64,000 nt of DNA, from IMG/VR virus record IMGVR_UViG_3300040801_004532, positions 1-64,000 of that record. The stretch is one strand, 5' to 3'. Made by a program: the position numbers and the translations under genes. How positions within the stretch are numbered: the first letter of the stretch is position 1; each line of letters opens with the position of its first letter. This document shows, piece after piece, positions 39,199 through 57,691 of the stretch. A model generated the notes under the pieces. It did not search any database. It saw only the letters and a list, made by a program, of their open reading frames with translations, and was not told the origin of the DNA.

Positions 39199-40701
39199 TT
39201 AAAGCATTCCTCCCATTCCTGTGAATGTCATTAATTCACAATGACCATCACTATTCTTTTTATCACTTGAATCTCTATTACTTTTTCTTGTTGCACTAAT
39301 AAATTTAAACCTTTCAAAATCAACCTTAAAATCAATCGCTACATTACTTTGTCCTGATCTGTTTTTTCCAATCTTGCCATGAACAAGATTATCATCAACT
39401 GGATCCTTAGCTAAAAGACCAACAAAATCAGCATGTTCTACTTTTTTGATTGATTCTGAAATTTGATCAACTCCAAGCTCTTTAGAGTCATTAATTTTAT
39501 ATGCAGAACGACCCAATTGAGTTGCAGTTATAATTGGTATATTATATTGAACAGCAAGGGTTTTTAATGCTAATGCAATATGCCCAAGCTCTAATCTATA
39601 TATATCATATCTAGTATCTGTTTTTAATAAATCTAGATAATCAACATAAAGTCCTGCAATTTTAGAATTTGGATATTGATCAATGGTATCATCAATAACA
39701 CCCATAAGATCCAATGGACTCATTGAAGTGGGTGGGAAATATTTCATTATGATTGTTGCGCTATTTTCATCAAGACGATCAAAAATCCTCTTTTTAATAT
39801 CTACCTTTTGACTAATCTCTGTTAGAAATTGTTTAATTGTTACATCAAATAATGGTTGATATGTTCTCATTAAAGATTCTTCAATTGTATTTTCCATAGT
39901 TACATAAATGAAAACATTATGAACCTCGCCTTTAACTGGTTGCTTTGCTTCTGGGATTGCTCTCATAGCGGTCGATGTTGCAGAAAATATAATTGAGTTA
40001 TTTAAAATTGTTGATTTCCCTGCTCCAGACCCCCCACCCCAAACATACAACCTTGAAGGTTCATACCCCCCAAATAAAATTTCATCAAGAAGAGGAAATC
40101 CAGTTGGGGTTTTATTTACCCTGTCATATTTCCTAAGGATCATTTCTTTAACACTATCAAAATCATCTTTATATAAATCGAGTGATGCTGCAGCCTCTAT
40201 TGCCATCGCTCTGTTATTTTCCATCATATTTGAATAAAGCTGTTTTATTGTAACCTCATAGTCTTCAATCAAATCATCAATTGAGTCAAATGATCCATCT
40301 TTAATTGACTCCAAAACCTTATCTAGATCATCATAATTTTTAAACAGAGAATTAATTTTCTTTCTTAATCTAACCTGTTTTACAATGTCCTGAAATACTG
40401 ATTCTTTTAATTCCTCGTGAATTTTTGAATCTAGAAAATCTTTGTGTTGGTTAAATTTTTCACTAAAAGCAATACTGTCTAGAACATTCTCGATAGTCTT
40501 ATCCTCAAGAAGAAGTTGGCAAATTGTCTTGAGACAATCTAATTTTGATTTTATTGTGACAGGAATTTCAAATGCCTGTTTGGATTCACTAAATAGAAGA
40601 ATATCTAATAAATCTCGATATAAAGCTTTTGTCTTTTTGATTCTTGAATTTTTATTAAGAATTAATGTAAAACAAGAATTTAGAAACGACTCTGTTATCA
40701 T
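39199..40701 (-). CDS. Replicative DNA helicase (DnaB/gp41-like)
   Basis: PTGF..LD, Walker A GGSGAGKS, VDYLDL, TATQ, SES, KNR. Confidence 0.9.
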   Translation of the reverse strand: MITESFLNSCFTLILNKNSRIKKTKALYRDLLDILLFSESKQAFEIPVTIKSKLDCLKTICQLLLEDKTIENVLDSIAFSEKFNQHKDFLDSKIHEELKESVFQDIVKQVRLRKKINSLFKNYDDLDKVLESIKDGSFDSIDDLIEDYEVTIKQLYSNMMENNRAMAIEAAASLDLYKDDFDSVKEMILRKYDRVNKTPTGFPLLDEILFGGYEPSRLYVWGGGSGAGKSTILNNSIIFSATSTAMRAIPEAKQPVKGEVHNVFIYVTMENTIEESLMRTYQPLFDVTIKQFLTEISQKVDIKKRIFDRLDENSATIIMKYFPPTSMSPLDLMGVIDDTIDQYPNSKIAGLYVDYLDLLKTDTRYDIYRLELGHIALALKTLAVQYNIPIITATQLGRSAYKINDSKELGVDQISESIKKVEHADFVGLLAKDPVDDNLVHGKIGKNRSGQSNVAIDFKVDFERFKFISATRKSNRDSSDKKNSDGHCELMTFTGMGGML

Positions 40702-41093: not shown

Positions 41094-41318
41094 TTATTCC
41101 GCCTTTTTTCCCACTGCTTTTTCAATCCAATCAATTTTTCCTGACCCAAGACAATGGTGACAGACCAACATAGTATTGTTTGGTACCTTTGGAAATTTTG
41201 ATGTTTTAATAAATTTTGCCCTCCTCACCAAACCACTACCACCACACGTTCTACAAAACTCCTGCCCTTCTTCAAGGGCAATGTAAGTTTTGTTATAAGC
41301 ATTATATCTTTTATTCAT
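41094..41318 (-). CDS. DnaJ-type zinc-finger protein (KxDWI family)
   Basis: CRTCGGSG...CHHCLGSGKIDWI. Confidence 0.65.
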   Translation of the reverse strand: MNKRYNAYNKTYIALEEGQEFCRTCGGSGLVRRAKFIKTSKFPKVPNNTMLVCHHCLGSGKIDWIEKAVGKKAE

Positions 41319-42708
41319 GGAAAGGCAATACCCTCGATTTATCATCAAGATCTACAAACTCATCTTTGGATAAATATTTCTTTACCAAATAATGACAATA
41401 ATCCTCATCTAAACTAGCTAAGACATTAAGGGATCTTGGGATACTATGAGCTTTAACTTTTTGTTTTCTTGTTAATTTTCCTTGGTTTAAAATCCTTGTA
41501 GCTTCTAAACATTCTCTATAAAATTCTTCTTCGTCACCAGATTCATAAATTGGATAAACACGTTCTGCAAATTCTCTCATACCTTGTTGAATATCTGTAT
41601 ATAAATCCAATGTATATAATATTGAATAGACCTTAACATCTTCCCAAAATGTATTTCTACTTGGATCATAAATCCCATCAACATTAATCTTTGAAAACCC
41701 CCACTTATCGGATAGACGATCAAAAATTCTTTGTGTCATATCATGAACAGATAGATCCTTTAAAAATCTCAGATCAAGTCTATCGCTTTTGATACTCATT
41801 TTTCTAATGTAGCCATATTCATCTGCAACATGCATAAACCTTGCGTGCATTACCTGCTTATAAATACCCGATGAATCATAAGTAATGTTCAAATCAATTC
41901 CATGTTTCTTTTTAATAACGACACTAAACAATTCATAAAACAATACATCCCTGAAATTTGCACCACCAAGAATATGAAAATTTAAATGTTTGAATCCATG
42001 TCTTATGGCTTCATTTACAAGCGGAACAATAGGAAGGATATAAATCACACATGGGATTGACATATCACTAGACATATTCGCAACAATTCCGCCTGTACCA
42101 TGATACTTAAAATGTCTGAACATATCATGGTCTCTTAGGAGCTTCGTATAAATTTCCCAAAGTTTGGGGGTACGAAAATGATGAACATATATAATCTTAT
42201 CACGAACATGATCAGGAAGAGATTTGGCTTTTTCATATGACTCAAGATTTAATTTATAAACATCATCAAAATTATGAAAAATCTTGCAACCAGGTCCCGG
42301 AGGAATATCAAGAATAAATGCTTTATCATAAACATCTGCATACTCAACAAGCCACTCATAATATAATTTATAAAGCAAATCAGATTCTGCTCTTGTTAAT
42401 CTTCCAATTGAAATCTGAAAGCCACCACTATCTGCAATCAAATTACAATTATCAAAGAGTCCCCACTCTCGACACTTCCTATATAAATCACCTTCTCGTT
42501 GTTTATATTTATCAAATTTTTTCTTTCCGCCAAAATCCTGACCAAATGAATGAAGAAACCCGGCAGTTGTTTTAGAAAGAAAGTTTGATATGTCTTCTCT
42601 CGTAAAATTATTGTTAAATCTCCCTCTTCGTCCTTCGATAAAATTTTCAAGAATAGTTGCAAGCGTCTCAAATCCTGCTAGAACATATCCACTTCTTTTA
42701 ACATCCAT
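41311..42708 (-). CDS. TGT-fold guanine transglycosylase (DpdA-like; probable DNA 7-deazaguanine insertase)
   Basis: ADSGGFQ, LDIPP, FHILG, YDSS in the order of the TGT/DpdA catalytic elements; queE nearby. Confidence 0.7.
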   Translation of the reverse strand: MDVKRSGYVLAGFETLATILENFIEGRRGRFNNNFTREDISNFLSKTTAGFLHSFGQDFGGKKKFDKYKQREGDLYRKCREWGLFDNCNLIADSGGFQISIGRLTRAESDLLYKLYYEWLVEYADVYDKAFILDIPPGPGCKIFHNFDDVYKLNLESYEKAKSLPDHVRDKIIYVHHFRTPKLWEIYTKLLRDHDMFRHFKYHGTGGIVANMSSDMSIPCVIYILPIVPLVNEAIRHGFKHLNFHILGGANFRDVLFYELFSVVIKKKHGIDLNITYDSSGIYKQVMHARFMHVADEYGYIRKMSIKSDRLDLRFLKDLSVHDMTQRIFDRLSDKWGFSKINVDGIYDPSRNTFWEDVKVYSILYTLDLYTDIQQGMREFAERVYPIYESGDEEEFYRECLEATRILNQGKLTRKQKVKAHSIPRSLNVLASLDEDYCHYLVKKYLSKDEFVDLDDKSRVLPFHE

Positions 42709-43151: not shown

Positions 43152-43676
43152 CTACAATTTTTCTATTACAATACTACCACCAGTGGACGAATCAAATTCC
43201 ATTGCACATTTTAACGCCAACTCAATTCGTTTTACTGGTTCCATATCATTGTTTAGTTCTTGTATTGCTTTCAAAGATCCCAAAGCATATGTACCGCCAG
43301 ATCCAATAGCAGTAAATTCATCCACGGTACTAATATGAAAATCAACCAAAATTTCATATAGCTGCTTTTTGTAACCAATAATAAGATTGGATACCCACGC
43401 TTCAGTTTGGTCGTCTGTAATAGCAAGACATCCCTTTTCTCGACAATGATTTCTCAGATAATCAGGGAAGTCAAGTATATCTTCTGGAGGGTCAAAAAAT
43501 TTAGAATGTAAAATTTGACACCCCCTTGCGCTGCCAACTGCACCCAGCAAATAATTTCCAACTCTAAATATTTTTTGGGCTTTAATGGGACGAATGTCAC
43601 CGCCTTCAGACGATCCTCTGGTATCTGCTCCTATATAAACATTTCCCTTATGTTTTATTCCTACAACACATGACAT
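43152..43676 (-). CDS. Ntn-hydrolase, HslV/proteasome-beta-like peptidase
   Basis: MSCVVG...IGAD...KIF...AIGSG..YALG. Confidence 0.8.
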   Translation of the reverse strand: MSCVVGIKHKGNVYIGADTRGSSEGGDIRPIKAQKIFRVGNYLLGAVGSARGCQILHSKFFDPPEDILDFPDYLRNHCREKGCLAITDDQTEAWVSNLIIGYKKQLYEILVDFHISTVDEFTAIGSGGTYALGSLKAIQELNNDMEPVKRIELALKCAMEFDSSTGGSIVIEKL

Positions 43677-43677
43677 T

Positions 43678-44478
43678 TTATTCCCCCTTTAATTTCATAT
43701 CATCTCTCATCCTAAGACATTTTGCTAGATCAAATGAGTAGTCGTATATATGTAACCCTTTACTTGAAGCAAATATTTCTCCATCTTCAATCCCAATCTC
43801 TTCTGTAATATATTCCTTTAATAATTGAATACCAGCAAGATTTGCAGGGAATCCTCCCCATAGGTCCCACGATCTGAAATATGGATAAAAGTGAAGTTTT
43901 CCATCTTGAATCCTTGTATCAATGTGTCTTAAACATGGAGGATCTTGTAAAAGCATATCAGTTGGATGTGCAACTTGTAAAACCATTTGATTATTTCTGT
44001 AACCTTTATTTTTATATGTCCAAATTAACAGTTCAATTTGATTTAAATGCCAATGACCGGTAGAATAAATAATGCCAAGATCAATTAATTCCTCAATTTC
44101 CTCTATGAGAATATTTGGCCAATGACCCTCCTTATATAAATGTAAGGGATAATTTATTGGATACGCAGTTAACCTTTGACCATATGTATATGATTCCCCA
44201 TCTTTTAATGCTCCAGTCATCAAATACGGAAGGTATTCATCTAGATAATCATCAGCTACAGGGTTTGGAATATTATGGTGTGCTTCTATCTGAGGTAAAA
44301 GAGGTTTTGACCAGGGATGTTTAATATGAACATTTACCCAATCAAATTCTAATCTTTTTTGCCCAGCATATGATCCCCGGTCAATTTTAAATACTGAACC
44401 TTCTTCAAGGATTCTAAAAAGAGTTTGAAACCAAGCATCTCCTAAATCTCTGGCTTCAATCGTTTGAACATTAAGCAT
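43678..44478 (-). CDS. thyA: Thymidylate synthase-family enzyme (archaeal-like ThyA, or dNMP hydroxymethylase)
   Basis: YTYGQR, DPPCL, FRSWD, FPAN, LHIY. Confidence 0.8.
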   Translation of the reverse strand: MLNVQTIEARDLGDAWFQTLFRILEEGSVFKIDRGSYAGQKRLEFDWVNVHIKHPWSKPLLPQIEAHHNIPNPVADDYLDEYLPYLMTGALKDGESYTYGQRLTAYPINYPLHLYKEGHWPNILIEEIEELIDLGIIYSTGHWHLNQIELLIWTYKNKGYRNNQMVLQVAHPTDMLLQDPPCLRHIDTRIQDGKLHFYPYFRSWDLWGGFPANLAGIQLLKEYITEEIGIEDGEIFASSKGLHIYDYSFDLAKCLRMRDDMKLKGE

Positions 44479-44490: not shown

Positions 44491-44817
44491 TCATGATATA
44501 ATTTTAGAATCTTCTTTTGGGGCTTCAAGGGTAAATTCATCAAGTGATTCTCGAGTTTTCTCATCTATAAGAAAACCATAAATTTCGTCAACCTTTAAAA
44601 CCTTCAAGAGGGATTTCCCAATTACCACATCCATTCCACCACGAGGATGCATAACAAGAATATCTCCTTTATTTATACCTTCAACTTTTAATCCAACAGA
44701 TAGAACCTTGCCATATGCTTGTGGATCCTGAACAGTTTCCGGAAGGATTATTCCTCCTGACGATTTACTTCTCTTCAGAACTTGTACTATAACTTTGTCT
44801 TCGATTGCTTCGATCAT
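44491..44817 (-). CDS. groES: Co-chaperonin GroES
   Basis: DKVIV...SSGGIILP...G.VLSVG...GD. Confidence 0.85.
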   Translation of the reverse strand: MIEAIEDKVIVQVLKRSKSSGGIILPETVQDPQAYGKVLSVGLKVEGINKGDILVMHPRGGMDVVIGKSLLKVLKVDEIYGFLIDEKTRESLDEFTLEAPKEDSKIIS

Positions 44818-45124
44818 TTTGTTTAGCTCCCTTCTTTTGCTTCTTTTTTTTACGAATGATTTTTTCTTTCAACTTCTCCAACTTTTCTTCTTCTTTTTGT
44901 ATTGCTCTTATAGATTGGACTTTTTTTCTTCTTTTCCTATCGCTAGGTTTCTCATAATACATCTTTTCTCTAAACTCTTTGGCAATACCACTCTTTGAAA
45001 ATTTCTTACGAAAGCGTTTTAAAAGTTCTTCATCACTCTCGTCTTTTCTACGAACTACACATATTCCTGTGTGTTCATCAGGATAATAATGTTTATGATA
45101 AGTCATAGCTTGAATATTTGCCAC
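44765..45124 (-). CDS. rpsU: Ribosomal protein bS21
   Basis: V.....ES.E..LKRFRKK..K.GI..E.R...YYEKPS..KRRK. Confidence 0.85.
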   Translation of the reverse strand: MANIQAMTYHKHYYPDEHTGICVVRRKDESDEELLKRFRKKFSKSGIAKEFREKMYYEKPSDRKRRKKVQSIRAIQKEEEKLEKLKEKIIRKKKKQKKGAKQNDRSNRRQSYSTSSEEK

Positions 45125-45133: not shown

Positions 45134-45805
45134 TTATACAAATCCATAAATTATATGGTCTCTCGATGAAAAGCTGAAACCATATTTCTCGCAAATATCA
45201 AAAACAGCTGCAGAATTTTTAATGAGATCTACCCTGGTTGTTCCCTCAGGCATAACCCAAACTCTATGGTTCCAACTAAGGTTTTTATAATTAGCGGAAA
45301 TATTGGCCAAAAACTTTTCAATCAACGGACTATCATCATATACAACTTTTATATAAACTTCTGGAAAACTTTCTAGAAGTTTAACATTTTGTAGTGCTGA
45401 TGATAGATCACTATCATTAAAGATTTTTGGCGAATAAACATATCTAACATGTTTATCAGGAGAAACCTCTTGAATTAACTGGAACAATTTATACCCATTT
45501 GATTCAACATTTGCAATTGGATAGTCCAGCTCATTAAGTAATAAAGCGGCTTCATCAAAATGTTTTGGAACCGTTGGTTCTCCACCTGTAATCAAAAGTC
45601 CTGCATTTGTTCTATAAATTGTATCTTGAATATCTGAAAGAAGATGCGGAGCCTCTGCTGAGATTCTCATTTTTACAGAGGTATCACACCAAGGACATTT
45701 CAGATTACAAGTCTTAAATCTGAGAATGATCATTGGTCGCCCGCTATCAATTCCTTCGCCTTGCCATGAAATAAAATTTTCGATTAATTTAACACTTTTA
45801 CTCAT
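45134..45805 (-). CDS. queE: 7-carboxy-7-deazaguanine synthase (radical SAM)
   Basis: E.F.SWQGEG..G....LR...CNLKCPWCDT, ITGGEP, ESNG, SPK. Confidence 0.85.
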   Translation of the reverse strand: MSKSVKLIENFISWQGEGIDSGRPMIILRFKTCNLKCPWCDTSVKMRISAEAPHLLSDIQDTIYRTNAGLLITGGEPTVPKHFDEAALLLNELDYPIANVESNGYKLFQLIQEVSPDKHVRYVYSPKIFNDSDLSSALQNVKLLESFPEVYIKVVYDDSPLIEKFLANISANYKNLSWNHRVWVMPEGTTRVDLIKNSAAVFDICEKYGFSFSSRDHIIYGFV

Positions 45806-45840: not shown

Positions 45841-48800
45841 TTATATAGTTAATAGTTCCGACTTTTCTCTTATATCAGTCAGCGGCTTAAGCATTAGCTC
45901 ATGCCTATCCATAAATGAAAATCTCAATGCTGCGTTTAAATCAGGGACAAAAAATGCTGGTAGCCTCCTTTCTTCATCGGGAATAGCAATTACCTCAAGT
46001 TTATTACCACGCCCAATAAATTTATCATATTTAGCTCTTATTTTTTCTCTTTCTTTATCATCTTGTATTTTATCAAAATCAATTCCTCTAACCCAGAACA
46101 TGTATGCCTTATTTCCAGGTCTATGAATATCATACATTATATTATTCCAGGCTTCCATAGCTCTAACGCCTTGTGGAATTGTTTTATAATCGCTTAGTTC
46201 TTTTCCCCAAGTTACAGGTCGAGCAATAGTTTTATCGCCTTGAATAATAAGATCTTTAAATTCCTTTTCTTTTCTTGACACATATTTTATAACTTTTGAT
46301 AATTTAAATTTTTCATCTTTCAGGATCAGCTCTGAAAGCTCTGATAAAAATTCTTTTGATTTACTTGGATAATCTGATCTTTTAATTTCAACACCCATAT
46401 AATTAATCTTATCAACTTCTTTTCCTTCGTTATTTATAACACGAATTGCATATCTCTTTTTAGCCAAAAACAATCCTCGTGAAATAACAAGCTCATTTTT
46501 TAATTCAAGGCGATTAAATTCTAAATTAACATTGTGTCGTTTAACCATTTCAACAATTCGATGTTTATTTAAAAATTCTTCAACCTCTTTACACCATCCT
46601 TGAATTTTCTCGACTGATAGATCTTTATTTTTAAACCCTCCAAAATAACAGAAAATTGAATCTGTATCGCCTGTTATTATATATTCGTTATTTCTTTCGG
46701 GCATTTCATCTGAGTACATTTCTTTTTTGGTTAAGGGATTGGGGTGCTCGTATTTTTCATTCTTGTCTATGTGCCTCATAAAAGCATCACCTTCAATAAT
46801 TGATGTTTTTAATGCCTCTTGTCCGGATAATGTTACGGCCCCTGCTACATCAATATCAAAAAATCTAAATGCCTTATTAGCTACAACTCCATATAATGTA
46901 TTTGCAAGGACCTTATAAACTAACTGTCTTGTATAAAAGAAATTTTCGGAATCTTTATCTTTTTCTTCAATCGCTTGAAACATCTCTTTTTTATATCTTT
47001 TTCTTGTTTTCATTAACATATCAACGACCTCACCAAAAACAGAAAACTCTTTTTCGTGTGGTAAAAAGAAACATCCGTTGATTGTATAAACTAAATTATT
47101 TTCTTTAACTTTTTTCATTAACTGGTCAGGAGTAATAACCATCTCTTTCTTTTCAAACAATGGATCATATACAACCTCAATTTTCTCCGGAAGATTTTCT
47201 GGATGATATGCTAATTCATAACCAAGATGTGAGTCTTTAGTTTTCATTACATAACTATTCACGCCAATGTTATATGTAATCATAATACTTGGGTATAGAG
47301 ATGCAAAGTCAAAGTCTGTAATCCAATCATATGCGCCTGGAATTGGACTAAAAACAAATGCCCCCGGATATTTTCCTTTTTCAGTATGAGGGTCAGAATT
47401 TTTTGAACCGAAACCTTTATTTCTAAGATATGATACCATCAACGAATCAATTTGACCAAATGATGATACAGAATCAAATGAAGTATTACAAATTATTCTT
47501 AACTCATTAAGCAGGTTAATATGAGCTAATTTATCATCAAGTTGCTCAAGGAGATCTGTATCCCGAATGTTATATTCAATTGTCTTATTAAACATTTTCC
47601 AATACATTTCATTGAAAGGTAAGGGCAGATCTATTTTTGTAATCCCCAACTCATGTTGTGCAATAAAACCAAGTTTATAATTTTCCATTTTTGTAAATGT
47701 AAATGTCCTATATAAAAAGTCCTGATCAATTGCTACACAACCAGGAATATGGCAAACATATTTTGAACCGTCAACATAAAACTCGCCAAATCTATTGAAC
47801 ATTGATTGCTTTAATCCAATCTTTGGCATTCTGTTATATATATATTCAAGGTCGAATGAAATACAGTTCCATCCTGCAATAAAATCAGGATCTTCACTTT
47901 TAAAATCTTTGGAAAATTCCCTCAACAGTTCCTTTTCTGTATTAAAAATTTTAAAATCAACCCCATCAATTTTTTCAATCGGTTCTGTTTTATTGTCAAC
48001 TACATAATGTGTTTTGGTTTTATTGAATATTGTTGTAAGCATATTAATTGGAAATTTGGCCTCTAGAGGACGGGGGAAAACTCGCTCATCCCCTGTATCT
48101 ACCTCAATATCGAAAAACATAATATTTGATTTAACTTTTTTAGCTTCGCCTTTACTGTAATGATAATAATCCATTGCATGTTTCGCTGTTATTCTGACAT
48201 CACCTTCGTATGTTATATCAGGATCTAAATTATATCTATCTCGGTATTTCACCTTAATTTGATTTAAATGATCATAAGGAACAATCTTCTTTCCTTGATG
48301 TCCCTTTTTTATTTGATAACAAACATAATCGTCATTCTCCGTATGATATATTTTTCTATTGTCCTTATCACGAAATATATAAAGGATTTGACTTGTTTTG
48401 TTAAGAAACTGAACATCAATCAATCTATAATCATCTGAATAAAATTGCTTTGGAATCTTATATCTAAATATTCCAGCCCCCATAGATTCAATATCATGAT
48501 GCGAAACCTCTATGTCTTTTCCACTCAACATTGTAGAAATTTGCCCCATCGCTTCTTCAAATTTTGGTTCCCAAACTCCCAAATTTCTATTGACAAACGA
48601 AGGATGAACTATTATGACAGTTTTAAACCCATTCCATTCTGTAACCTTGCCATGAATTTTTGTTATGCCTGATTTTCCCATTCCAAATGCAGACATAGGA
48701 CTTCCGCCCATAATAACAACAAGTTTTGGATTACAAATCTTTGTTATATTTATACAATTGATTTTGCAGTTTTTAATAACATCATCATCTGGGTTGCCGG

Positions 48801-49080
48801 TTGTTCCATCATCATTTAAGGTTTGACAAAGGACAACATTTGTAAGAAGGTAATTGCATTTATTTAAACCAAATTTATTAAAGTATTTTCTAAATAATTT
48901 CCCAGCCTTCCCGACTAATGGATTACCTTTTTTAACTTCTTCTTTACCAGGATTTTCTGCGATAAAAACTACATCTACTTTTGATAAATCATCTTCACAA
49001 TTTGTTTCAAGAATACACGAAGGGAATTCTAAAAGTTTACACTCGGCACAATTTGCAAAAGACTTTTTTATTGAAAACAA
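45841..49080 (-). CDS. Family B DNA polymerase with N-terminal family-4-like uracil-DNA glycosylase domain
   Basis: UDG: CAEC, AENPG, P.VGKAG, TNVVLC, HPS. Exonuclease: DIE, N...FD, YN..D. Polymerase: DFASLYPS, K..AN..YG, GDTDS, KKRY. Confidence 0.9.
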   Translation of the reverse strand: MFSIKKSFANCAECKLLEFPSCILETNCEDDLSKVDVVFIAENPGKEEVKKGNPLVGKAGKLFRKYFNKFGLNKCNYLLTNVVLCQTLNDDGTTGNPDDDVIKNCKINCINITKICNPKLVVIMGGSPMSAFGMGKSGITKIHGKVTEWNGFKTVIIVHPSFVNRNLGVWEPKFEEAMGQISTMLSGKDIEVSHHDIESMGAGIFRYKIPKQFYSDDYRLIDVQFLNKTSQILYIFRDKDNRKIYHTENDDYVCYQIKKGHQGKKIVPYDHLNQIKVKYRDRYNLDPDITYEGDVRITAKHAMDYYHYSKGEAKKVKSNIMFFDIEVDTGDERVFPRPLEAKFPINMLTTIFNKTKTHYVVDNKTEPIEKIDGVDFKIFNTEKELLREFSKDFKSEDPDFIAGWNCISFDLEYIYNRMPKIGLKQSMFNRFGEFYVDGSKYVCHIPGCVAIDQDFLYRTFTFTKMENYKLGFIAQHELGITKIDLPLPFNEMYWKMFNKTIEYNIRDTDLLEQLDDKLAHINLLNELRIICNTSFDSVSSFGQIDSLMVSYLRNKGFGSKNSDPHTEKGKYPGAFVFSPIPGAYDWITDFDFASLYPSIMITYNIGVNSYVMKTKDSHLGYELAYHPENLPEKIEVVYDPLFEKKEMVITPDQLMKKVKENNLVYTINGCFFLPHEKEFSVFGEVVDMLMKTRKRYKKEMFQAIEEKDKDSENFFYTRQLVYKVLANTLYGVVANKAFRFFDIDVAGAVTLSGQEALKTSIIEGDAFMRHIDKNEKYEHPNPLTKKEMYSDEMPERNNEYIITGDTDSIFCYFGGFKNKDLSVEKIQGWCKEVEEFLNKHRIVEMVKRHNVNLEFNRLELKNELVISRGLFLAKKRYAIRVINNEGKEVDKINYMGVEIKRSDYPSKSKEFLSELSELILKDEKFKLSKVIKYVSRKEKEFKDLIIQGDKTIARPVTWGKELSDYKTIPQGVRAMEAWNNIMYDIHRPGNKAYMFWVRGIDFDKIQDDKEREKIRAKYDKFIGRGNKLEVIAIPDEERRLPAFFVPDLNAALRFSFMDRHELMLKPLTDIREKSELLTI

Positions 49081-49154
49081 ATAAATGCCTCCTCAGTTTA
49101 GTTTTGATTTTGTTCCGATTAAAAAAATAATTAACCATTTAAAAAAACATTCAT

Positions 49155-49174
49155 CTATATATATTAATAAGTGA
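49155..49174 (+). promoter_or_regulatory. Putative early promoter
   Basis: CTATATATATTAATAAGTGA. Confidence 0.55.
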
Positions 49175-49221
49175 AAGTAGGTTGGGCGCCTAATATTTAT
49201 TACCGAAGAAAGGAGAACAGC

Positions 49222-50043
49222 ATGACCGAACATGAAACGACAGCAATTACCAAGCAAGACGTGGAAAAGGTTGTGTCAGTGATTTCGATCAATGACGCAG
49301 AAAAAATCCTCGGAATCAAAAACGAGCCTCCGTACGACATCAAAAAGCTCCTCCATGAGTATCACATCGGTTTTGAAGTTCTCATGGAAAACCGCGAGTT
49401 CAAAAAGCTTCGCCCTTTGACGGATGCCAAGAATATCATTCTTCGGCACCTCATCGAGAACCAAGTCGAAGAGAACGGCCGGTTCGACATGGAAGGGGTT
49501 ATTCCGTTTGAAGATGCTTGCACGTCTTGCCACGGCACCGGGGAATTATATAAATTCTTCCGGCGAGTCGTCACCCTCGATTGCAAATTCTGCGAGGGCG
49601 AGGGTGAAGTTACTTTAGAGTGCCGGGCCTGCGGCGGATCCGGTCGCTATATACGAGAGTACGGCGACCTGAAGATCGATGTGGCTTGCAAAAAATGCGA
49701 CAAAGATCCCGAAACCGGCGACCCCCTTGGGGTTGTGACTTACAAATGCCGGCGGTGTCGGGGAAAAGGAACATTCCGGAAAACCGTGATTGACAGCAAG
49801 ATCAAATCCACGACCCATTGTAAGGTTTGCAAGGGCCGGGGGTTCATCGTTCCGGATGATCGGTTCCCTCCCCGAAGGGGTCAAACGATTCAAATTGCCA
49901 ACCCGGTCATCAAGGAAAGCGACCTTGAATCAATCGGAAGCGTCATCAAGGAAAGCAAGCCGGAAGCGGCCGAAATCTCCATCGAGGAAGACAACCTGGA
50001 ATCACTCGAAAGCGCCATCAAGGATTCCCCCGCAAGCGAATAA
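49222..50043 (+). CDS. Multi-CxxCxGxG (DnaJ central domain-like) zinc-finger protein without a J-domain
   Basis: Six CxxC units; AAGGAG SD; GC-richer. Confidence 0.7.
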   Translation: MTEHETTAITKQDVEKVVSVISINDAEKILGIKNEPPYDIKKLLHEYHIGFEVLMENREFKKLRPLTDAKNIILRHLIENQVEENGRFDMEGVIPFEDACTSCHGTGELYKFFRRVVTLDCKFCEGEGEVTLECRACGGSGRYIREYGDLKIDVACKKCDKDPETGDPLGVVTYKCRRCRGKGTFRKTVIDSKIKSTTHCKVCKGRGFIVPDDRFPPRRGQTIQIANPVIKESDLESIGSVIKESKPEAAEISIEEDNLESLESAIKDSPASE

Positions 50044-53841: not shown

Positions 53842-53918
53842 CGGGGCGTGGCGCAGCCTGGTAGCGCGCCTGCTTTGGGAGCAGGAAGCCGGAGGTTCAA
53901 ATCCTCTCGCCCCGACCA
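53842..53918 (+). tRNA. tRNA-Pro(UGG)
   Basis: Cloverleaf; CCTGC-TTTGGGA-GCAGG; CCA end. Confidence 0.95.
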
Positions 53919-53957
53919 CCCAATTTTAATTTTAAAAAACATAAAGGTCGAATAGTT

Positions 53958-54203
53958 ATGGTGAGGGTCATCCATAGGAATTGCAACAAACCAGCTTTTT
54001 ATTTTAAAAGCCGATTGGATATTGGGGATATTATATATGCCTCAAATATAATTTTCCTGGATGGATCAACTCCAGAACCGGACACCCCTATGATTTGTGG
54101 TTCATGCAACCAAATGATTTTATCAGGCGAATTAGAACAAGAAGGTTGGACCGACTGGTTTATGGTCGAAGAATTTCACACATTTGAAAACAAGAAAGGA
54201 TGA
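53958..54203 (+). CDS. Hypothetical protein
   Basis: 81 aa with HxxC/CxxC. Confidence 0.55.
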
Positions 54204-54207
54204 GAAA

Positions 54208-54474
54208 ATGTCGTTGTTTGCAAAGAAGAAAATGACCCATGCTGAAATCGTTGCTCCATTAAAAACCATGGCTGAAACTCTATCAAGCTATATAAAAGAT
54301 CAAGCAGAAACCATTGGGGAATTGAATGTAAAAAAGAGAGAGATCGACAATCAGATTGAATTTTCAAATGAAGAAATTGAAAAATCAAACCATACAGTTG
54401 AGCAGATTAAGAAAATGGTTAACCTTCCCAAAATCAAGAAAATGCCGGCTGATTCGGTTCCTTCGGATGAATAA
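54208..54474 (+). CDS. Coiled-coil hypothetical protein
   Basis: ORF from ATG 54208. Confidence 0.55.
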   Translation: MSLFAKKKMTHAEIVAPLKTMAETLSSYIKDQAETIGELNVKKREIDNQIEFSNEEIEKSNHTVEQIKKMVNLPKIKKMPADSVPSDE

Positions 54475-54501
54475 CAATATGCCTGCGTGGCGATTAAATT
54501 C

Positions 54502-54558
54502 TTATATTCGAACCCTAAATTATTTTAGAACAAAAAAATAAAAGGGGTTCGACTATAA
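54502..54558 (+). promoter_or_regulatory. RBS-sequestering hairpin with late promoter motif in its loop
   Basis: TTATA-T-TCGAACCCT pairs with GGGGTTCGA-C-TATAA; loop contains TTTAGAACAAAA. Confidence 0.65.
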
Positions 54559-55328
54559 TGATTTGTGAATATTGTAAAAATAAACACGATGGATCATATG
54601 GATCGGGGAGATTTTGTTCTTCAAAATGTGCCAGGGGGTTTTCTACATCAAAGAAAAGAAAAGACATTAACAAAAAAGTGTCGGAAACTCTTAAAGGATA
54701 TAAAACAATTCCTGGCGGAAAAGTTAAATTATGCGATTATGGTTGTTGTAAAGAAGCAAAATTTCAATTGAAAAACAAAAAATGGTGTTGCTCAGAAAGC
54801 CATAATAAATGCTCAGCTGTTAGAAAGAAAAATTCTAAAGGTTTGACAAAATCGCATAAAAATGGGCGTCCTGCTTTTCCAGAAGGAGCTTATTTAAAGG
54901 GGCATGAGTCATTCAAAAAAAATCTTAAAGAAAAATATAAAAAGTTAAATTTTATTGATAAACCTATAGCAGAAAAACGAAAAATTATATTAAAGGATCA
55001 AAACAATAAATGTGCCATTTGTAATATTGAACAAGAATGGAATGATAAACCTTTAATTTTCCATCTTGATCATATAGATGGCAACAGAAAAAATTGGAGT
55101 AGAGATAATCTAAGATTTATCTGTCCCAACTGTCATAGCCAAACAGAAACATATTGTAGGGGAGGTAATAAGAACATATCAAATAAGCAGCTTAAAAAAT
55201 TACTAATAGAAACAAACTTTAATTTTACAAAAACTTTAGAATTAGCAAACTTATTTCCTGGTGGTTATAACTGGAACCGTGTTAAAAAAATAGCAAGTAA
55301 AATGTGCCAGGGTGATGGAATTTGGTAG
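54558..55328 (+). CDS. HNH homing endonuclease
   Basis: MICEYC...GSGRFCS..CA N-terminus; CAIC...HLDHIDG...N...NLRFICPNCHSQT. Confidence 0.9.
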   Translation: MICEYCKNKHDGSYGSGRFCSSKCARGFSTSKKRKDINKKVSETLKGYKTIPGGKVKLCDYGCCKEAKFQLKNKKWCCSESHNKCSAVRKKNSKGLTKSHKNGRPAFPEGAYLKGHESFKKNLKEKYKKLNFIDKPIAEKRKIILKDQNNKCAICNIEQEWNDKPLIFHLDHIDGNRKNWSRDNLRFICPNCHSQTETYCRGGNKNISNKQLKKLLIETNFNFTKTLELANLFPGGYNWNRVKKIASKMCQGDGIW

Positions 55329-55392
55329 ACATGTATGTTTTAGAAGCATATGCCGTAATGGCGTGGGAGTTCAAGTCTCCCTCCTGGCACCA
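55306..55392 (+). tRNA. tRNA-Leu(UAG)
   Basis: Long variable arm; TAG anticodon; CCA; overlaps the HNH 3' end. Confidence 0.9.
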
Positions 55393-55416
55393 AATCAAAT
55401 GAAAGTGAAAACAAAA

Positions 55417-55872
55417 ATGAGCGATCATTTCCTTGAAGCGAGAATTCCATGTTATAAATGCCTTGTTATTTCAGCATGTAAAGAATTTAGTTGTCTTGAT
55501 GAATACCAAAAGGAAGCATTGAAAAATAATTATAGACAAATATGCCTAATGATTCCACAACCTGATTCACAAAATAAAAACTATAAGAAAAGTCTTTTAG
55601 AATGTTGGGCGAATTTAGGACATAGAATTTCTTCAAGTGTACAAAATAGTGAATCAGGCGATGTCAAGGAAGGAGATAGTGTTAAAATAAATCCTTCTTT
55701 ATCTTTTCTTATAAATGATCTATCTGCATTAACACAATGGATTATAAACTCCTCTAGTTGGAGAGAATCAGAATTCTACGAATTTGATCGTTTTGAAATA
55801 TCAAGGCGATTGGAAATTCTATTAAGAATTGTAAATTCAAGCCCGAGTAGCTCAGCTGGCCAGAGCGACTGA
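55417..55872 (+). CDS. PCxxCLxxxxC family protein
   Basis: IPCYKCLVISAC; 3' end runs into tRNA-Thr. Confidence 0.55.
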   Translation: MSDHFLEARIPCYKCLVISACKEFSCLDEYQKEALKNNYRQICLMIPQPDSQNKNYKKSLLECWANLGHRISSSVQNSESGDVKEGDSVKINPSLSFLINDLSALTQWIINSSSWRESEFYEFDRFEISRRLEILLRIVNSSPSSSAGQSD

Positions 55873-55917
55873 TTTGTAATCAGTAAGTCGGGGGTTCGAC
55901 TCCCTCCTCGGGCTCCA
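55841..55917 (+). tRNA. tRNA-Thr(UGU)
   Basis: ACTGA-TTTGTAA-TCAGT; CCA. Confidence 0.95.
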
Positions 55918-56116
55918 AAAAAAAGAAAGGATTGAATTATGAATCCAGATGGGTATCATTTGGCATCAACTATATTCCTTCTGGTAAATGGGATTTGGTG
56001 GGGTAAAAATACTCCAATAAATCTTTTAATAAAAACTATATTCTGGAGTCTTGGTATATGGGGGGTAATTATTTGCCTTATTGATTTTGGATTGCTAACT
56101 CCTTAATTTAGATAAA

Positions 56117-56193
56117 GCCCCCGTAGCTCAGCGGAATAGAGCATCTGACTTCTAATCAGAGGGTCGCAGGTTCGAATCCTGCCGGGGGTACCA
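56117..56193 (+). tRNA. tRNA-Arg(UCU)
   Basis: TCTGA-CTTCTAA-TCAGA; CCA. Confidence 0.95.
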
Positions 56194-56206
56194 CCAAAAC
56201 AAGGAA

Positions 56207-56509
56207 TTGCTAATGCTTGGAATGAGAGAAGAAATTTCAGAAATGATAGAAAATATCACATGTATAATCATAGGGCCACTTATTGTATTTATAGTTTTAG
56301 CAATAACCTCTATTGCTTTTATATTTTATAAAAATCCTTGTAACAAATGTATATTAAAAGTAAGGTGCTCAGAAGTATGTCATCAATCTAAAAAGTGGGA
56401 TTCAGCTCATGACATTTTTAACGACGCTAAAGAAATGCCAATATTGGCGGCAGCGGGTGCCTGTTATATTTTAGCAGTTGGAATAGCATTATATAATCTA
56501 CTCGTATAA
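56207..56509 (+). CDS. Membrane protein of the PCxxC(I/L)xxxxC family
   Basis: TM-NPCNKCILKVRCSEVC-TM. Confidence 0.55.
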   Translation: MLMLGMREEISEMIENITCIIIGPLIVFIVLAITSIAFIFYKNPCNKCILKVRCSEVCHQSKKWDSAHDIFNDAKEMPILAAAGACYILAVGIALYNLLV

Positions 56510-56540
56510 TTTGGTTAACCTGAAACAAGGCAGGAATTAA

Positions 56541-56798
56541 ATGGGAATTGAAAATCTTGAAGAGTTCAGAATAATTAAAGAAATTATCAGAAGGGACGGG
56601 GTCGGGATTCCTGATAGAAATGGATGGAAACCAAAAAGAGGTATGATAGTTGAGTTAAAAGACGGAAGACATGAAGTCTTTCGAACTACAGTTAAATCGT
56701 CTCTTGAGGAAACTATTATTCCACTCCTACCGCAAATCGAAAGAATAACATTCATTCTAGATGATGAAGAATATGAATTGGCTATATGTGATTGGTGA
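56541..56798 (+). CDS. Hypothetical protein
   Basis: 85 aa. Confidence 0.5.
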   Translation: MGIENLEEFRIIKEIIRRDGVGIPDRNGWKPKRGMIVELKDGRHEVFRTTVKSSLEETIIPLLPQIERITFILDDEEYELAICDW

Positions 56799-57063
56799 AA
56801 ACGCTGCTTATGTTTATACACAAATTATATGGTTGCTTGTACGACTATGGGTATATATAACAGTAAAAGATCCATGTAAAAATTGTTTAATTAAATCATG
56901 CTGTACAGAAAAATGTGAAGAAAAAATTCAAATATTAAATTTCATATATCCTGAAGAAAAAGAAGGCGATGCAAAATTTATCGGGGTGCTTTGTCTATTT
57001 GCATTGGTCGTTCCTTCTTTTCTTTTGATATACTTTACAATTATGATAATTGCAGACCTGTAG
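56761..57063 (+). CDS. Membrane protein of the PCxxCLxxxxC family
   Basis: TM-DPCKNCLIKSCCTEKC-TM. Confidence 0.55.
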   Translation: MMKNMNWLYVIGENAAYVYTQIIWLLVRLWVYITVKDPCKNCLIKSCCTEKCEEKIQILNFIYPEEKEGDAKFIGVLCLFALVVPSFLLIYFTIMIIADL

Positions 57064-57127
57064 CCAAGCGGTAAGGCACGAGGTTTTGGTCCTCGCATCC
57101 CAGGTTCGAATCCTGGCAGGTCTGCCA
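57054..57127 (+). tRNA. tRNA-Gln(UUG)
   Basis: CGAGG-TTTTGGT-CCTCG; CCA. Confidence 0.93.
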
Positions 57128-57144
57128 ACTCGAAAGGAAAATAA

Positions 57145-57309
57145 ATGAAAGAAATTCAATTTCATCAAGTCAAAATTGATTTCTATTGTGATCGTTGTGA
57201 AGCAAGGGAAAAGGGTGTAAGCGTTCAGGAATGTATTTTCAATGGTCCGCCCATGTGTCAAAAATGTGACGAAGAAATGTCACCGGTCAAAATCTTTCTC
57301 GACAAGTGA
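57145..57309 (+). CDS. Small zinc-ribbon protein
   Basis: 54 aa with CDRC...CQKC; AAGGA SD. Confidence 0.5.
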   Translation: MKEIQFHQVKIDFYCDRCEAREKGVSVQECIFNGPPMCQKCDEEMSPVKIFLDK

Positions 57310-57319
57310 AAGGAACGTC

Positions 57320-57685
57320 ATGACCGAAGAGCAAAGGTTTGAGCAGTTAATCGAAGATGAACGTATCAAAAATGTTACAACACTATTAAAAAAGATTGAC
57401 GAAAACGAAGTTCATTTTCAGGATCCAAATATTCAAGCGATTTTAGAAGAACTTTCTTCTTCCGAGAAGAAATTTTACAAATGGGTTTCATTGGCTGATT
57501 CCCTTCCGCGCGGATCCAAACTATTCAAATTATTAGTAAAGGTTCATAAACTCGGTATGATGGGGCATGAGAACTATCAAAAAATCTATGGTGACACGGT
57601 AGATAAGGACACGGAAGTCAGAGATAAATTATACGAAGATACTCCATTTGATAAGTTGGATGTCGATCAGGCATTTTTTGATTAA
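57320..57685 (+). CDS. Hypothetical protein
   Basis: ORF from ATG 57320. Confidence 0.55.
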   Translation: MTEEQRFEQLIEDERIKNVTTLLKKIDENEVHFQDPNIQAILEELSSSEKKFYKWVSLADSLPRGSKLFKLLVKVHKLGMMGHENYQKIYGDTVDKDTEVRDKLYEDTPFDKLDVDQAFFD

Positions 57686-57691
57686 AACAAT

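What the first reader, a model, noticed from the sequence alone, without database searches (positions are those of the whole stretch)
45841..49080. Uracil-DNA-glycosylase domain fused to a family B polymerase with motif C TGDTDS
Seen: the first ~190 aa are family-4 UDG-like, with four potential Fe-S cysteines but altered pocket residues (AENPG and PLVG instead of GE.PG and PFVG), in frame with a complete PolB whose YGDTDS reads TGDTDS. Established: UDG-like fusions are known on SPO1-type family A polymerases, and poxvirus UDG is a processivity factor. Inference: a scanning or processivity domain, possibly adapted to modified DNA.
Basis: partly seen in the sequence, partly recalled or inferred. 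Interest (0 to 1): 0.6.

Follow-up and report, generated by a model that had tools for sequence, protein, structure and literature searches.

The report
Uracil glycosylase fused to phage polymerase
A large uncultured T4-like phage makes its replicative DNA polymerase with a probably active uracil-removing enzyme built onto its front end. This design was known for another polymerase family but not described for this one, and it turns out to be widespread in metagenomes.

Summary
Window 45841-49080 (-) is one 1079-aa ORF with a TTG start and a GAGGAGG ribosome-binding site. It joins a family-4-type UDG domain (aa ~1-190), a variable linker, and a complete RB69/T4 gp43-like family B polymerase.

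The fusion is not an artefact. More than 300 clusters at 90% identity carry it, on contigs up to 277 kb. About 60 clusters at 50% identity carry it down to ~28% identity. None of 50,697 deposited phage genomes has it, and no paper I could search describes it.

The UDG domain looks active:
- The four Fe-S cysteines are invariant (66/66).
- Glu42, Asn81 and His159 are kept in 62-65 of 66.
- The domain is as conserved as the exonuclease and palm domains.
- AENPG is specific to the query's clade. PLVG is the majority state among fused domains.
- TGDTDS is ordinary variation.

The best reading is a UDG tethered in cis that checks the template for uracil ahead of the polymerase. This has been shown for UDG-PolA and for mpox E4/F8. 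A clamp loader in the genome argues against a processivity role.

The gene sits in a conserved block with a QueE-like radical-SAM gene and a new TGT-fold, DpdA-like protein. QueC and QueD lie elsewhere in the genome. 7-deazaguanine DNA is therefore plausible, but no link to the UDG domain is shown.

The parts
45841..49080 (-). Whole gene: UDG-PolB fusion, 1079 aa (P0001), stop codon included
   Evidence: ORF and translation. Pfam UDG + DNA_pol_B_exo1 + DNA_pol_B. phrog_262 DNA polymerase, 3.9e-127.
49088..49094 (-). Shine-Dalgarno-like GAGGAGG, 7 nt upstream of the TTG start
   Evidence: Read directly from the sequence. The start position agrees with the N-termini of homologues.
48511..49080 (-). 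Family-4-type UDG domain, aa 1-190. Fe-S ligands C11, C14, C85 and C105; motif A AENPG; PLVG; N81; motif B HPSFVNRN.
   Evidence: Pfam 5e-17. NCBIfam Arch_udg, UDG_fam4 and UdgX models all hit below their cut-offs. PDB 1ui0 2e-18 with a residue alignment. Conservation over 66 fused domains.
48946..48960 (-). Motif A, AENPG (aa 41-45). Glu42 is the family-4 catalytic Glu. Asn43 is specific to the query's clade.
   Evidence: E in 62/66, P in 65/66. N in 20/66, all in clade 1; A in 41/66.
48910..48921 (-). PLVG (aa 54-57), with Leu where free family-4 UDGs have the base-stacking Phe
   Evidence: L in 53/66 and F in 13/66 fused domains. Aligned to PFVG of 1ui0, 1l9g and 4zbx.
48583..48606 (-). Motif B, HPSFVNRN (aa 159-166), with catalytic His159
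   Evidence: H in 64/66 and P in 65/66. Aligned to HPAYLLRN of 1ui0.
48475..48570 (-). Helix plus variable linker (aa 171-202) between UDG and the polymerase N-terminal domain
   Evidence: Mean identity is 39% here, against 66-70% in every domain. pLDDT dips to 63 at aa 191-200. Unfused relatives start aligning at query aa ~199-207.
45844..48474 (-). RB69/T4 gp43-like family B polymerase (aa 203-1079): N-terminal, 3'-5' exonuclease, palm/fingers and thumb domains
   Evidence: Foldseek against RB69 gp43: E ~5e-43, TM (target) 0.73-0.76. Exo I D324/E326, Exo II N405/D410, Exo III Y503/D507, motif A D591, and motif B K723..N727..Y730G731 are invariant.
46657..46674 (-). Polymerase motif C, TGDTDS (aa 803-808)
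   Evidence: GDTDS is invariant and T803 is kept in at least 90% of the clade. Other clades read Y, A, G or L at this position, in fused and unfused PolBs alike.
45134..45805 (-). Context: QueE-like radical-SAM gene immediately downstream
   Evidence: phrog_2076 'QueE-like radical SAM' 1.3e-31. NCBIfam QueE models hit below their cut-offs. Present next to the fused PolB in 28 of 31 loci.
41311..42708 (-). Context: 465-aa TGT-fold, DpdA-like protein (P0287) between the polymerase and DnaB
   Evidence: Invariant DSGGFQ. AF2 pLDDT 88.6. Foldseek top hits are TGT and DpdA 7ui4. VIA Z 18-19 over ~310-330 residues. phrog_887 3.5e-5. No Pfam TGT or DpdA hit.
39199..40701 (-). Context: DnaB-type replicative helicase closing the conserved block
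   Evidence: Pfam DnaB_C. The same gene order is seen in relatives at 69%, 46% and 35% polymerase identity.

Best explanation
The gene encodes the replicative polymerase of an uncultured T4-like jumbo phage. A catalytically competent, Fe-S-containing family-4-type uracil-DNA glycosylase is tethered in cis to its N-terminus.

Proposed mechanism:
1. The UDG module rides on the polymerase at the side where the single-stranded template enters. The N-terminal domain of family B polymerases lies there.
2. It flips out and removes uracil ahead of the active site. That uracil comes from dUTP misincorporation or cytosine deamination.
3. The resulting abasic site is bypassed or repaired, so progeny DNA is uracil-free.

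Shown here:
- The architecture.
- The intact polymerase and exonuclease motifs.
- The conserved UDG catalytic residues and Fe-S ligands.
- The wide distribution of the fusion.

Inferred:
- That the glycosylase is active.
- Which base it removes.
- Where the domain sits on the polymerase.
- What happens to the abasic site.
For: Architecture and integrity.

Constraint on the UDG domain:
- Across 66 fused UDG domains spanning ~28-100% full-length identity, C11/C14/C85/C105 are kept in 66/66, E42 in 62/66, N81 in 65/66 and H159 in 64/66.
- The UDG core is as conserved (70%) as the exonuclease (69%) and palm/fingers (69%) domains, while the linker is free to vary (39%).

Age and spread of the fusion:
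- 76 of the 151 sequences scanned (the query plus the top 150 50%-identity cluster representatives) carry UDG.
- These sit mainly in one 87-row clade of the polymerase tree.

Precedent: UDG-PolA of phiLo and YerA41 excise template dU ahead of the fork and bypass the abasic site with dA. Mpox E4 UDG occupies the same position on a family B polymerase (PMC13697223).

Processivity is provided otherwise: a gp44-like clamp loader scores 2e-57.
Against: - No activity data exist for any member.
- The separate-chain docking job gave no verdict.
- The stacking Phe is Leu, the first Gly of motif A is Ala, and clade 1 has Asn43 plus a 'NxDGTTGNP' loop in place of the usual RPPxNR. The protein scores below NCBIfam's family-4 cut-offs. 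Specificity may therefore not be plain uracil.
- No ATP-dependent ligase was found in the 248-kb record. An AP endonuclease and a family X polymerase, the partners that accompany UDG-PolA, were not searched for. The record is about 79% complete.
Confidence: 0.55

Rival explanations
1. The UDG domain has a changed specificity or a different point of action. It might recognise a modified or damaged pyrimidine such as 5-hydroxymethyluracil, or act as a second editor on the nascent strand, rather than doing plain uracil surveillance of the template.
For: - Clade-specific Asn43 gives AENPG. From my own knowledge, the Asn at this motif position is the catalytic residue of MUG/TDG (GINPG) and SMUG1 (GMNPG), enzymes with wider pyrimidine ranges.
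- Leu replaces the stacking Phe, and a clade-specific loop follows C85.
- A divergent ThyA-like gene that keeps the dUMP-specifying Asn lies three genes downstream.
- A second editing mode was proposed for UDG-PolA (PMC10201439).
Against: - Leu55 is also the majority state in clades with the ordinary Ala at position 43, so it is not tied to the Asn.
- The ThyA-like gene is the only thymidylate synthase homologue in the record (no ThyX). It is closest to a genuine archaeal-type TS model, so it is probably just TS.
- No pyrimidine hypermodification gene was seen in the window; the rest of the record was searched only for selected families.
- phiLo and YerA41 UDG domains do not excise a C5-substituted dU.
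Confidence: 0.2
2. The UDG domain is a non-catalytic DNA-binding module, acting in processivity, strand displacement or template guidance. This has been proposed for N4-like UDG-PolA and is partly true of poxvirus D4.
For: - Some lineages inside the fused clade carry only remnants of the domain (P0163, P0165, P0178) or lack it altogether (P0169, checked on its contig). The polymerase can therefore do without it.
- Motif A and the stacking residue depart from the canon.
Against: - The catalytic Glu, Asn and His and all four Fe-S cysteines are almost invariant over a deep radiation. A mere DNA-binding module would not need this.
- A clamp loader is encoded.
- N4-like domains, the model for this reading, have lost these residues.
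Confidence: 0.12
3. The fusion works together with the neighbouring 7-deazaguanine genes. The polymerase-borne glycosylase would be part of a replication-coupled modification or quality-control unit for deazaguanine-containing DNA.
For: - The order UDG-PolB, QueE-like gene, ~455-aa TGT-fold protein, DnaB is kept at 69%, 46% and 35% polymerase identity.
- QueC lies directly upstream of a clade-3 fusion and near a split clade-2 fusion.
- 28 and 27 of 31 fused loci have the QueE-like and the DpdA-like neighbour respectively, against 24 and 12 of 157 unfused loci.
Against: - In the IMG/VR set the fused loci form one clade, giving one independent contrast. The association cannot be told apart from shared ancestry.
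- Ordinary T4-like PolB loci without UDG also sometimes have QueE and DpdA-like neighbours.
- A UDG pocket is built for pyrimidines, whereas deazaguanine replaces G.
- DpdA insertion is held to be post-replicative (PMC10516641).
Confidence: 0.1
4. The fusion is an assembly or gene-calling artefact that joins two separate genes.
For: None found. One distant contig (L202) has the UDG part in a different frame from the polymerase.
Against: - The reading frame is continuous here and in hundreds of independently assembled contigs from four sources.
- The junction position is conserved.
Confidence: 0.01

Closest known systems
UDG-PolA fusions of phages (SPO1-like, SP15-like such as phiLo and YerA41, and N4-like; PMC10201439, PMC13697223; PDB 9QHS)
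   Same: - An N-terminal UDG-superfamily domain sits in one chain with a proofreading replicative polymerase.
- In SPO1- and SP15-like enzymes the catalytic Glu and His are kept, and dU is excised from the template ahead of the fork.
- The phiLo UDG domain is detectably similar to this one (phmmer 1e-9 to 9qhs_A; tblastn hit H74).
   Different: - The polymerase here is family B (gp43-like), not family A.
- It has no large inserts.
- The known hosts of the PolA versions carry thymine hypermodifications, whereas this genome carries guanine (deazaguanine) pathway genes.
- No activity or structure is known for any PolB fusion.
UDG bound in trans to viral family B polymerases (poxvirus D4/E4 with A20/A22 and E9/F8; herpesvirus UNG)
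   Same: [quoted passage not shown]
   Different: - Those are family-1 UDGs without Fe-S, encoded separately and held by a bridging protein. In poxviruses they double as part of the processivity factor.
- Here a family-4-type Fe-S UDG is joined covalently, and a clamp loader is present.
Free-standing family-4 UDG (UDGa) of thermophilic bacteria and archaea (1ui0, 1l9g/1vk2, 4zbx)
   Same: The fold, the CxxC...C...C Fe-S ligands, the Glu of motif A, the Asn before the third Cys, and the HPS..RN motif B.
   Different: - AENPG replaces GE(A/G)PG, PLVG replaces PFVG, and there is an altered loop after C85.
- It scores below the TIGR00758 and NF040953 cut-offs.
- It is never free-standing in this clade.
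Read-ahead uracil recognition by archaeal family B polymerases
   Same: Template uracil is sensed upstream of the active site by the N-terminal region of a family B polymerase. The N-terminal domain's part in uracil recognition is cited in PMC7544198; the rest is from my own knowledge.
   Different: The archaeal pocket is part of the polymerase N-terminal domain. It stalls synthesis without excision. Here a whole glycosylase domain is appended.
RB69/T4 gp43
   Same: The overall fold (TM 0.73-0.76) and all exonuclease and polymerase motifs. The genome also has a T4-type portal, prohead protease, Gp23 capsid protein and clamp loader.
   Different: About 20-26% sequence identity; Thr instead of Tyr before GDTDS; an N-terminal UDG domain.

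Membership tests
UDG superfamily, family 4 (UDGa) | UDG fold and profile (Pfam PF03167) | tested here: met
   62.7 bits against a cut-off of 24.3, aa 34-167. 2e-18 to 1ui0.
UDG superfamily, family 4 (UDGa) | Four cysteines ligating a 4Fe-4S cluster (CxxC ... C ... C) | tested here: met
   C11 and C14 align to the CxxC of 1ui0. C85 and C105 are assigned as the third and fourth ligands. All four are 66/66 invariant in fused domains. Cluster binding itself is untested.
UDG superfamily, family 4 (UDGa) | Motif A, GE(A/G)PG, with catalytic Glu | tested here: inconclusive
   It reads AENPG. Glu42 and Pro44 are kept, but the first Gly is Ala and the third position is Asn.
UDG superfamily, family 4 (UDGa) | Base-stacking Phe in PFVG | tested here: not met
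   Leu55 (PLVG). L in 53/66 and F in 13/66 fused domains.
UDG superfamily, family 4 (UDGa) | Motif B, HP(S/A)xxxR(N), with catalytic His | tested here: met
   HPSFVNRN at aa 159-166. His in 64/66.
UDG superfamily, family 4 (UDGa) | Curated family cut-off (TIGR00758 125.3 bits; NF040953 250 bits) | tested here: not met
   70.9 and 77.4 bits for aa 1-200.
UDG superfamily, family 4 (UDGa) | Excision of uracil from single- and double-stranded DNA | not testable with these tools
   Needs an enzyme assay.
UdgX (covalent uracil-DNA binder) | GEQPG motif and KRRIH loop, with the His that cross-links to the abasic site | tested here: not met
   Motif A is AENPG. The segment after C85 reads QTLNDDGTTGNPDDD, acidic and without His. 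TIGR03914 scores 65-70 bits against a cut-off of 190. The UdgX motifs themselves are from my own knowledge.
UDG-polymerase fusion (as defined for UDG-PolA) | N-terminal UDG domain in one polypeptide with a proofreading replicative polymerase | tested here: met
UDG-polymerase fusion (as defined for UDG-PolA) | Polymerase of family A | tested here: not met
   Family B by Pfam, PHROG and fold.
UDG-polymerase fusion (as defined for UDG-PolA) | UDG pocket placed on the path of the 5' template strand | tested here: inconclusive
   The full-length AF2 model has pTM 0.74, but no coordinates or PAE were available. The two-chain docking job gave no verdict.
T4/RB69-type family B replicative polymerase | Exo I-III and polymerase motifs A, B and C with catalytic carboxylates | tested here: met
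   D324/E326, D410, D507, D591, K723, D805/D807 are invariant.
T4/RB69-type family B replicative polymerase | gp43 fold | tested here: met
   Foldseek E 5e-43, TM (target) 0.73-0.76 to RB69 gp43.
DpdA / TGT superfamily (neighbour gene 41311-42708) | TGT TIM-barrel fold | tested here: met
   VIA Z 18-19, 310-330 residues aligned, rmsd ~4 Å. Foldseek top hits are TGT and DpdA 7ui4.
DpdA / TGT superfamily (neighbour gene 41311-42708) | Catalytic Asp in the DSGG(F/Y)Q motif | tested here: met
   D93-S-G-G-F-Q98 is conserved in 53 homologues: D93, S94 and Q98 invariant, G95, G96 and F97 kept in at least 90%. The motif's identity with TGT is from my own knowledge.
DpdA / TGT superfamily (neighbour gene 41311-42708) | Match to the Pfam TGT (PF01702) or DpdA (PF23859) profile | tested here: not met
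   No hit in the genome or the protein. No PDB sequence hit with a family profile. No tblastn hit in 50,697 phage records.
DpdA / TGT superfamily (neighbour gene 41311-42708) | 7-deazaguanine present in the phage DNA | not testable with these tools
   Needs LC-MS of virion DNA.

The most novel reading that the evidence does not exclude
A large, uncultured lineage of T4-like jumbo phages replicates with a family B polymerase that has its own glycosylase. In the query's clade that glycosylase has evolved a hybrid active site: the family-4 Glu plus the MUG/SMUG1-type Asn, and Leu in place of the stacking Phe. Its substrate range would then differ from plain uracil.

On this reading the polymerase works as one unit with the adjacent QueE-like gene and a previously unrecognised DpdA-like transglycosylase subfamily. 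Base surveillance, deazaguanine modification and replication would be coupled at the fork.
Probability: 0.15. Interest if true: 0.8.

Novelty: new variant of a known kind. Interest (0 to 1): 0.55.

Why it matters
Replication-coupled uracil removal has just been shown, structurally and biochemically, for phage family A polymerases. For family B polymerases it has only been seen with a UDG bound in trans, in poxviruses and herpesviruses.

A natural cis fusion on a gp43-type enzyme would be the simplest system in which to study how a glycosylase and a family B replicase share a template. RB69 gp43 is among the best-understood replicases. A single polypeptide would do, with no bridging proteins.

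The fusion is widespread: hundreds of clusters, absent from cultured phages. A major branch of environmental T4-like phages therefore replicates differently from the textbook models.

The conserved neighbourhood also points to an unrecognised TGT-fold, DpdA-like family. That would extend the known range of deazaguanine DNA modification.

As an enzyme, a proofreading PolB with built-in uracil removal could be useful for carry-over control or for work on damaged DNA.

Tried and rejected
- Docking: complex prediction of UDG (aa 1-195) against the polymerase core (aa 200-1000) gave no verdict. It counts neither for nor against.
- Interdomain geometry: model coordinates and PAE are not exposed, so the distance from the UDG pocket to the template path could not be measured.
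- Literature: searches for a described UDG-PolB fusion found none. They found only UDG-PolA and UDG bound in trans.
- Deposited phages: tblastn against 50,697 genomes found no fusion. UDG-like hits there lie on family A polymerases and on one DnaE-type annotation.
- GTDB genomes: only three hits, on MAG contigs labelled Thermoplasmatales, Mycoplasmatota and Heimdallarchaeota. I read these as mis-binned phage contigs, so they give no host clue.
- DpdA-like protein by sequence: no hit with Pfam TGT or DpdA, with a family profile against the PDB, or with tblastn against phages. Only fold, motif, a weak PHROG hit and Atlas features support it.
- Negative family searches of the 248-kb record, which is about 79% complete: NrdD, FolE, dUTPase, ATP-dependent ligase and ThyX. 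The gp45 clamp profile gave only a sub-threshold hit inside a long ORF.
- Test of coupling between fusion and deazaguanine neighbours: one independent contrast only, so it is uninformative.
- L202 as an example of a separate UDG gene: rejected as evidence. The UDG ORF stops before motif B and the remainder is out of frame, so this is either a frameshift or decay.
- N-terminal 150-230-aa extension of clade 3: no Pfam match.
- UdgX-like covalent binder: rejected, because the KRRIH/His loop is absent.
- TGDTDS as a meaningful change: rejected. The residue before GDTDS varies freely (Y, T, A, G, L) among fused and unfused phage PolBs.


Full report
**1. The observation**

Window 45841-49080 on the minus strand is a single ORF of 1079 codons. 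It starts at a TTG that follows GAGGAGG by 7 nt.

- Pfam finds UDG (aa 34-167, 5e-17), the family B exonuclease domain (310-470) and the family B polymerase domain (548-947).
- PHROGs gives DNA polymerase phrog_262 at 3.9e-127.
- NCBIfam's family-4 UDG, archaeal UDG and UdgX models all hit aa 3-167, but below their curated cut-offs.
- phmmer against PDB sequences aligns aa 7-166 to Thermus thermophilus family-4 UDG 1ui0 (2e-18), and to Thermotoga maritima (1l9g/1vk2) and 4zbx UDGs.

That alignment places C11/C14 on the CxxC, AENPG on GEGPG, PLVG on PFVG, TNVVLC on TNIVKC and HPSFVNRN on HPAYLLRN. Motif C of the polymerase reads TGDTDS.

**2. The fusion is real and widespread**

- A word-indexed search found 413 cluster representatives of similar length. 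The best 120 are all 1053-1106 aa (one has an intein) with UDG+PolB at 64-75% identity. They lie on contigs up to 255 kb from JGI, ENA, NCBI and Logan.
- Restricting the search to aa 1-200 gave 310 long proteins, again all fusions.
- An exhaustive HMMER search of 1.84 billion 50%-identity representatives showed that the architecture reaches much further. Full-length alignments (query 1-1079) continue down to about 28-32% identity.
- 76 of the 151 sequences scanned (the query plus the best 150 representatives) carry a UDG domain by a family HMM.

Three forms can be told apart:

| Form | Identity to query | UDG motifs | Motif C | Other features |
|---|---|---|---|---|
| Query's clade | ≥42% | AENPG / PL[VI]G / HPS[FY]VNRN | TGDTDS | – |
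| Second clade | 33-37% | [AG]EAPA / PLVG | YxDTDS | Many members are split about 20 residues after motif C |
| Third group | 28-32% | Mostly canonical: [GA]EAP[GA] / PFVG or PL[IV]G | YGDTDS | Unassigned 150-230-aa N-terminal extension |

On a tree of the polymerase core (113 representatives), the fused proteins lie mainly in one 87-row clade (SH-aLRT 95). Unfused or remnant-bearing members are scattered inside it. A separate 18-row clade of ordinary T4-like polymerases has none.

P0169 is a true unfused member: non-coding sequence lies upstream of its start.

No deposited phage genome has the fusion. None of 50,697 records covers at least 80% of the query. The UDG domain alone hits only family A polymerases of SPO1-like Bacillus phages and phiLo, free UDGs, and one DnaE-type annotation.

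GTDB species representatives hold only three copies, on MAG contigs of mutually inconsistent taxa.

**3. What the phage is**

The window is the first 64 kb of a 248,136-bp IMG/VR record estimated at 79% complete.

- It encodes a T4-type portal, prohead protease and Gp23 capsid protein.
- It encodes a DnaB helicase and a gp44-like clamp loader (2e-57).
- It carries 11 tRNAs, bS21 and a GroES-like protein.
- bS21 points to a bacterial host (from my own knowledge).
- Related contigs reach 224-277 kb. This is a lineage of T4-like jumbo phages.

**4. Is the UDG domain likely to work?**

- Over 66 fused UDG domains from the whole radiation, the four Fe-S cysteines are invariant. Glu42 is kept in 62, Pro44 in 65, Asn81 in 65, His159 in 64 and Pro160 in 65.
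- Within the query's clade the UDG core is 70% identical on average. That matches the exonuclease (69%) and palm/fingers (69%) domains. The 30-residue linker is only 39%.
- This is the pattern of an enzyme under selection. [quoted passage not shown]
- Leu at the stacking position is the majority state among fused domains (53 L, 13 F). Asn43 is confined to the query's clade (20 of 66).
- From my own knowledge, an Asn at this motif position is the catalytic residue of MUG/TDG (GINPG) and SMUG1 (GMNPG). The clade may therefore have a modified chemistry or substrate range. This is a lead, not a result.
- The UdgX signature (KRRIH loop) is absent.
- TGDTDS is unremarkable. The residue before GDTDS is Y, T, A, G or L in various fused and unfused phage polymerases.

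**5. How it most likely works**

The full-length AF2 model is good (pLDDT 87, pTM 0.74). Its polymerase part superposes on RB69 gp43 (TM 0.73-0.76).

I could not read coordinates, and a two-chain docking job gave no verdict. The placement of the UDG domain is therefore inferred.

The inference rests on two things:
- The N-terminal attachment, next to the polymerase N-terminal domain.
- Direct precedent. phiLo and YerA41 UDG-PolA guide the 5' template strand to the UDG site, excise dU ahead of the fork, and bypass the abasic site mainly with dA. Mpox E4 UDG sits at the equivalent place on a family B polymerase (PMC13697223).

That paper treats family B only in trans. I found no description of a cis UDG-PolB.

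A processivity role is less likely because a clamp loader is present and the catalytic residues are intact.

**6. The modified-DNA question**

The gene immediately downstream (45134-45805) is a QueE-like radical-SAM protein (phrog_2076, 1.3e-31).

Between it and DnaB lies a 465-aa protein with no Pfam match. The evidence for its identity is:
- An invariant DSGGFQ motif.
- A confident model: pLDDT 88.6, pTM 0.89.
- The fold of tRNA-guanine transglycosylases and the DNA preQ0 insertase DpdA (Foldseek; VIA Z 18-19 over 310-330 residues).
- A weak PHROG hit and Atlas features that agree.

QueC and QueD lie elsewhere in the record. FolE, NrdD and the canonical TGT and DpdA profiles were not found.

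DpdA-family proteins are regarded as the signature of 7-deazaguanine DNA (PMC10516641). Such a modification is therefore plausible here, through what looks like an unrecognised subfamily. That family has 611 homologues, all annotated 'hypothetical', and no hit in deposited phages.

The order UDG-PolB, QueE-like gene, ~455-aa protein, DnaB is kept at 69%, 46% and 35% polymerase identity. QueC abuts a clade-3 fusion.

Among 188 deduplicated IMG/VR loci with at least 8 kb of flank:

| Loci | QueE-like neighbour | DpdA-like neighbour |
|---|---|---|
| Fused (31) | 28 | 27 |
| Unfused (157) | 24 | 12 |

The fused loci form a single clade in that set, so there is one independent contrast only. This is conserved synteny, not demonstrated functional coupling. 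A pyrimidine pocket also has no obvious business with a guanine analogue.

The nearby ThyA-like gene keeps the catalytic Cys and the dUMP-specifying Asn. It is the only thymidylate synthase homologue in the record, so it is probably an ordinary, divergent thymidylate synthase.

**7. Verdict**

- The thing is a new variant of a known kind: a UDG-polymerase fusion on a family B instead of a family A scaffold.
- It is common in metagenomes, absent from cultured phages and, as far as I could search, undescribed.

Noticed in passing
window 41311-42708 (-): A 465-aa protein with no Pfam match, an invariant DSGGFQ motif and a TGT/DpdA fold (Z 18-19). Its family has 611 members, all annotated 'hypothetical', and none in deposited phages. 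It is probably an unrecognised DpdA-like subfamily.
   Followed up: yes
window 45134-45805 (-); G000:90558-91499 (-); G000:178186-178638 (+): QueE-like radical-SAM, QueC (a 314-aa ORF) and QueD genes are scattered over the genome. FolE was not found. Together with the DpdA-like gene they suggest 7-deazaguanine in the phage DNA.
   Followed up: partly
window 44765-45124 (-), 44491-44817 (-), 43152-43676 (-), 49171-50043 (+): Phage-encoded ribosomal protein bS21, a GroES-like co-chaperone, an HslV-like peptidase, and a DnaJ-type zinc-finger (CXXCXGXG) protein surround the polymerase gene.
   Followed up: no
window 43678-44478 (-): A very divergent ThyA-like protein. It is closest to the methanogen-type thymidylate synthase model (109 bits, below the cut-off). 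The catalytic Cys and the dUMP-specifying Asn are kept. Thymidylate synthase and dUMP hydroxymethylase cannot be told apart from sequence.
   Followed up: partly
window 53842-63455 (+): An array of 11 tRNA genes: Pro, Leu x3, Thr, Arg, Gln, Met x2, Ser x2.
   Followed up: no
window 29061-29876 (-): A 271-aa protein with DUF559/REase-like and ROS/MucR-like regions, directly beside the Gp23 capsid gene. It may be a homing endonuclease.
   Followed up: no
P0045, P0143, P0154 (relatives): Some UDG-PolB genes carry an intein, with LAGLIDADG in P0143, inside the polymerase. This brings them to 1529-1571 aa.
   Followed up: partly
P0174, P0177, P0179-P0186, P0193, P0194; L008:9190-11676: In a second clade the fusion is split about 20 residues after motif C. 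The UDG, exonuclease and palm parts lie on one ~830-aa protein. The thumb is presumably on a separate gene.
   Followed up: partly
P0187, P0189, P0199, P0203 and others; L007:126-1541: A third group has an unassigned 150-230-aa extension in front of the UDG domain. In L007 a 471-aa QueC-domain gene overlaps the start of the polymerase gene.
   Followed up: partly
L286:388-3129: P0169 is an unfused polymerase nested among fused ones. It lies on a contig whose gene translates only with TAG read as Gln, so this is a stop-codon-recoded relative.
   Followed up: partly
hit H59, MK994522.1 59992-60456: A UDG-like stretch (28% identity to aa 4-170) lies under a 'DNA polymerase III DnaE superfamily' annotation in Methanobacterium virus PhiF1. 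This may be a UDG fusion on a third polymerase family.
   Followed up: no
L202:10001-13735: The extension-plus-UDG ORF stops before motif B, and the polymerase follows in another frame. This is a frameshift, decay or fission of the fusion; which one is unresolved.
   Followed up: partly
P0034, P0083; L283-L285: Contigs of this phage lineage are deposited in MAGs labelled Thorarchaeota, Thermoplasmata, Heimdallarchaeota and Mycoplasmatota. This is most likely mis-binning.
   Followed up: no
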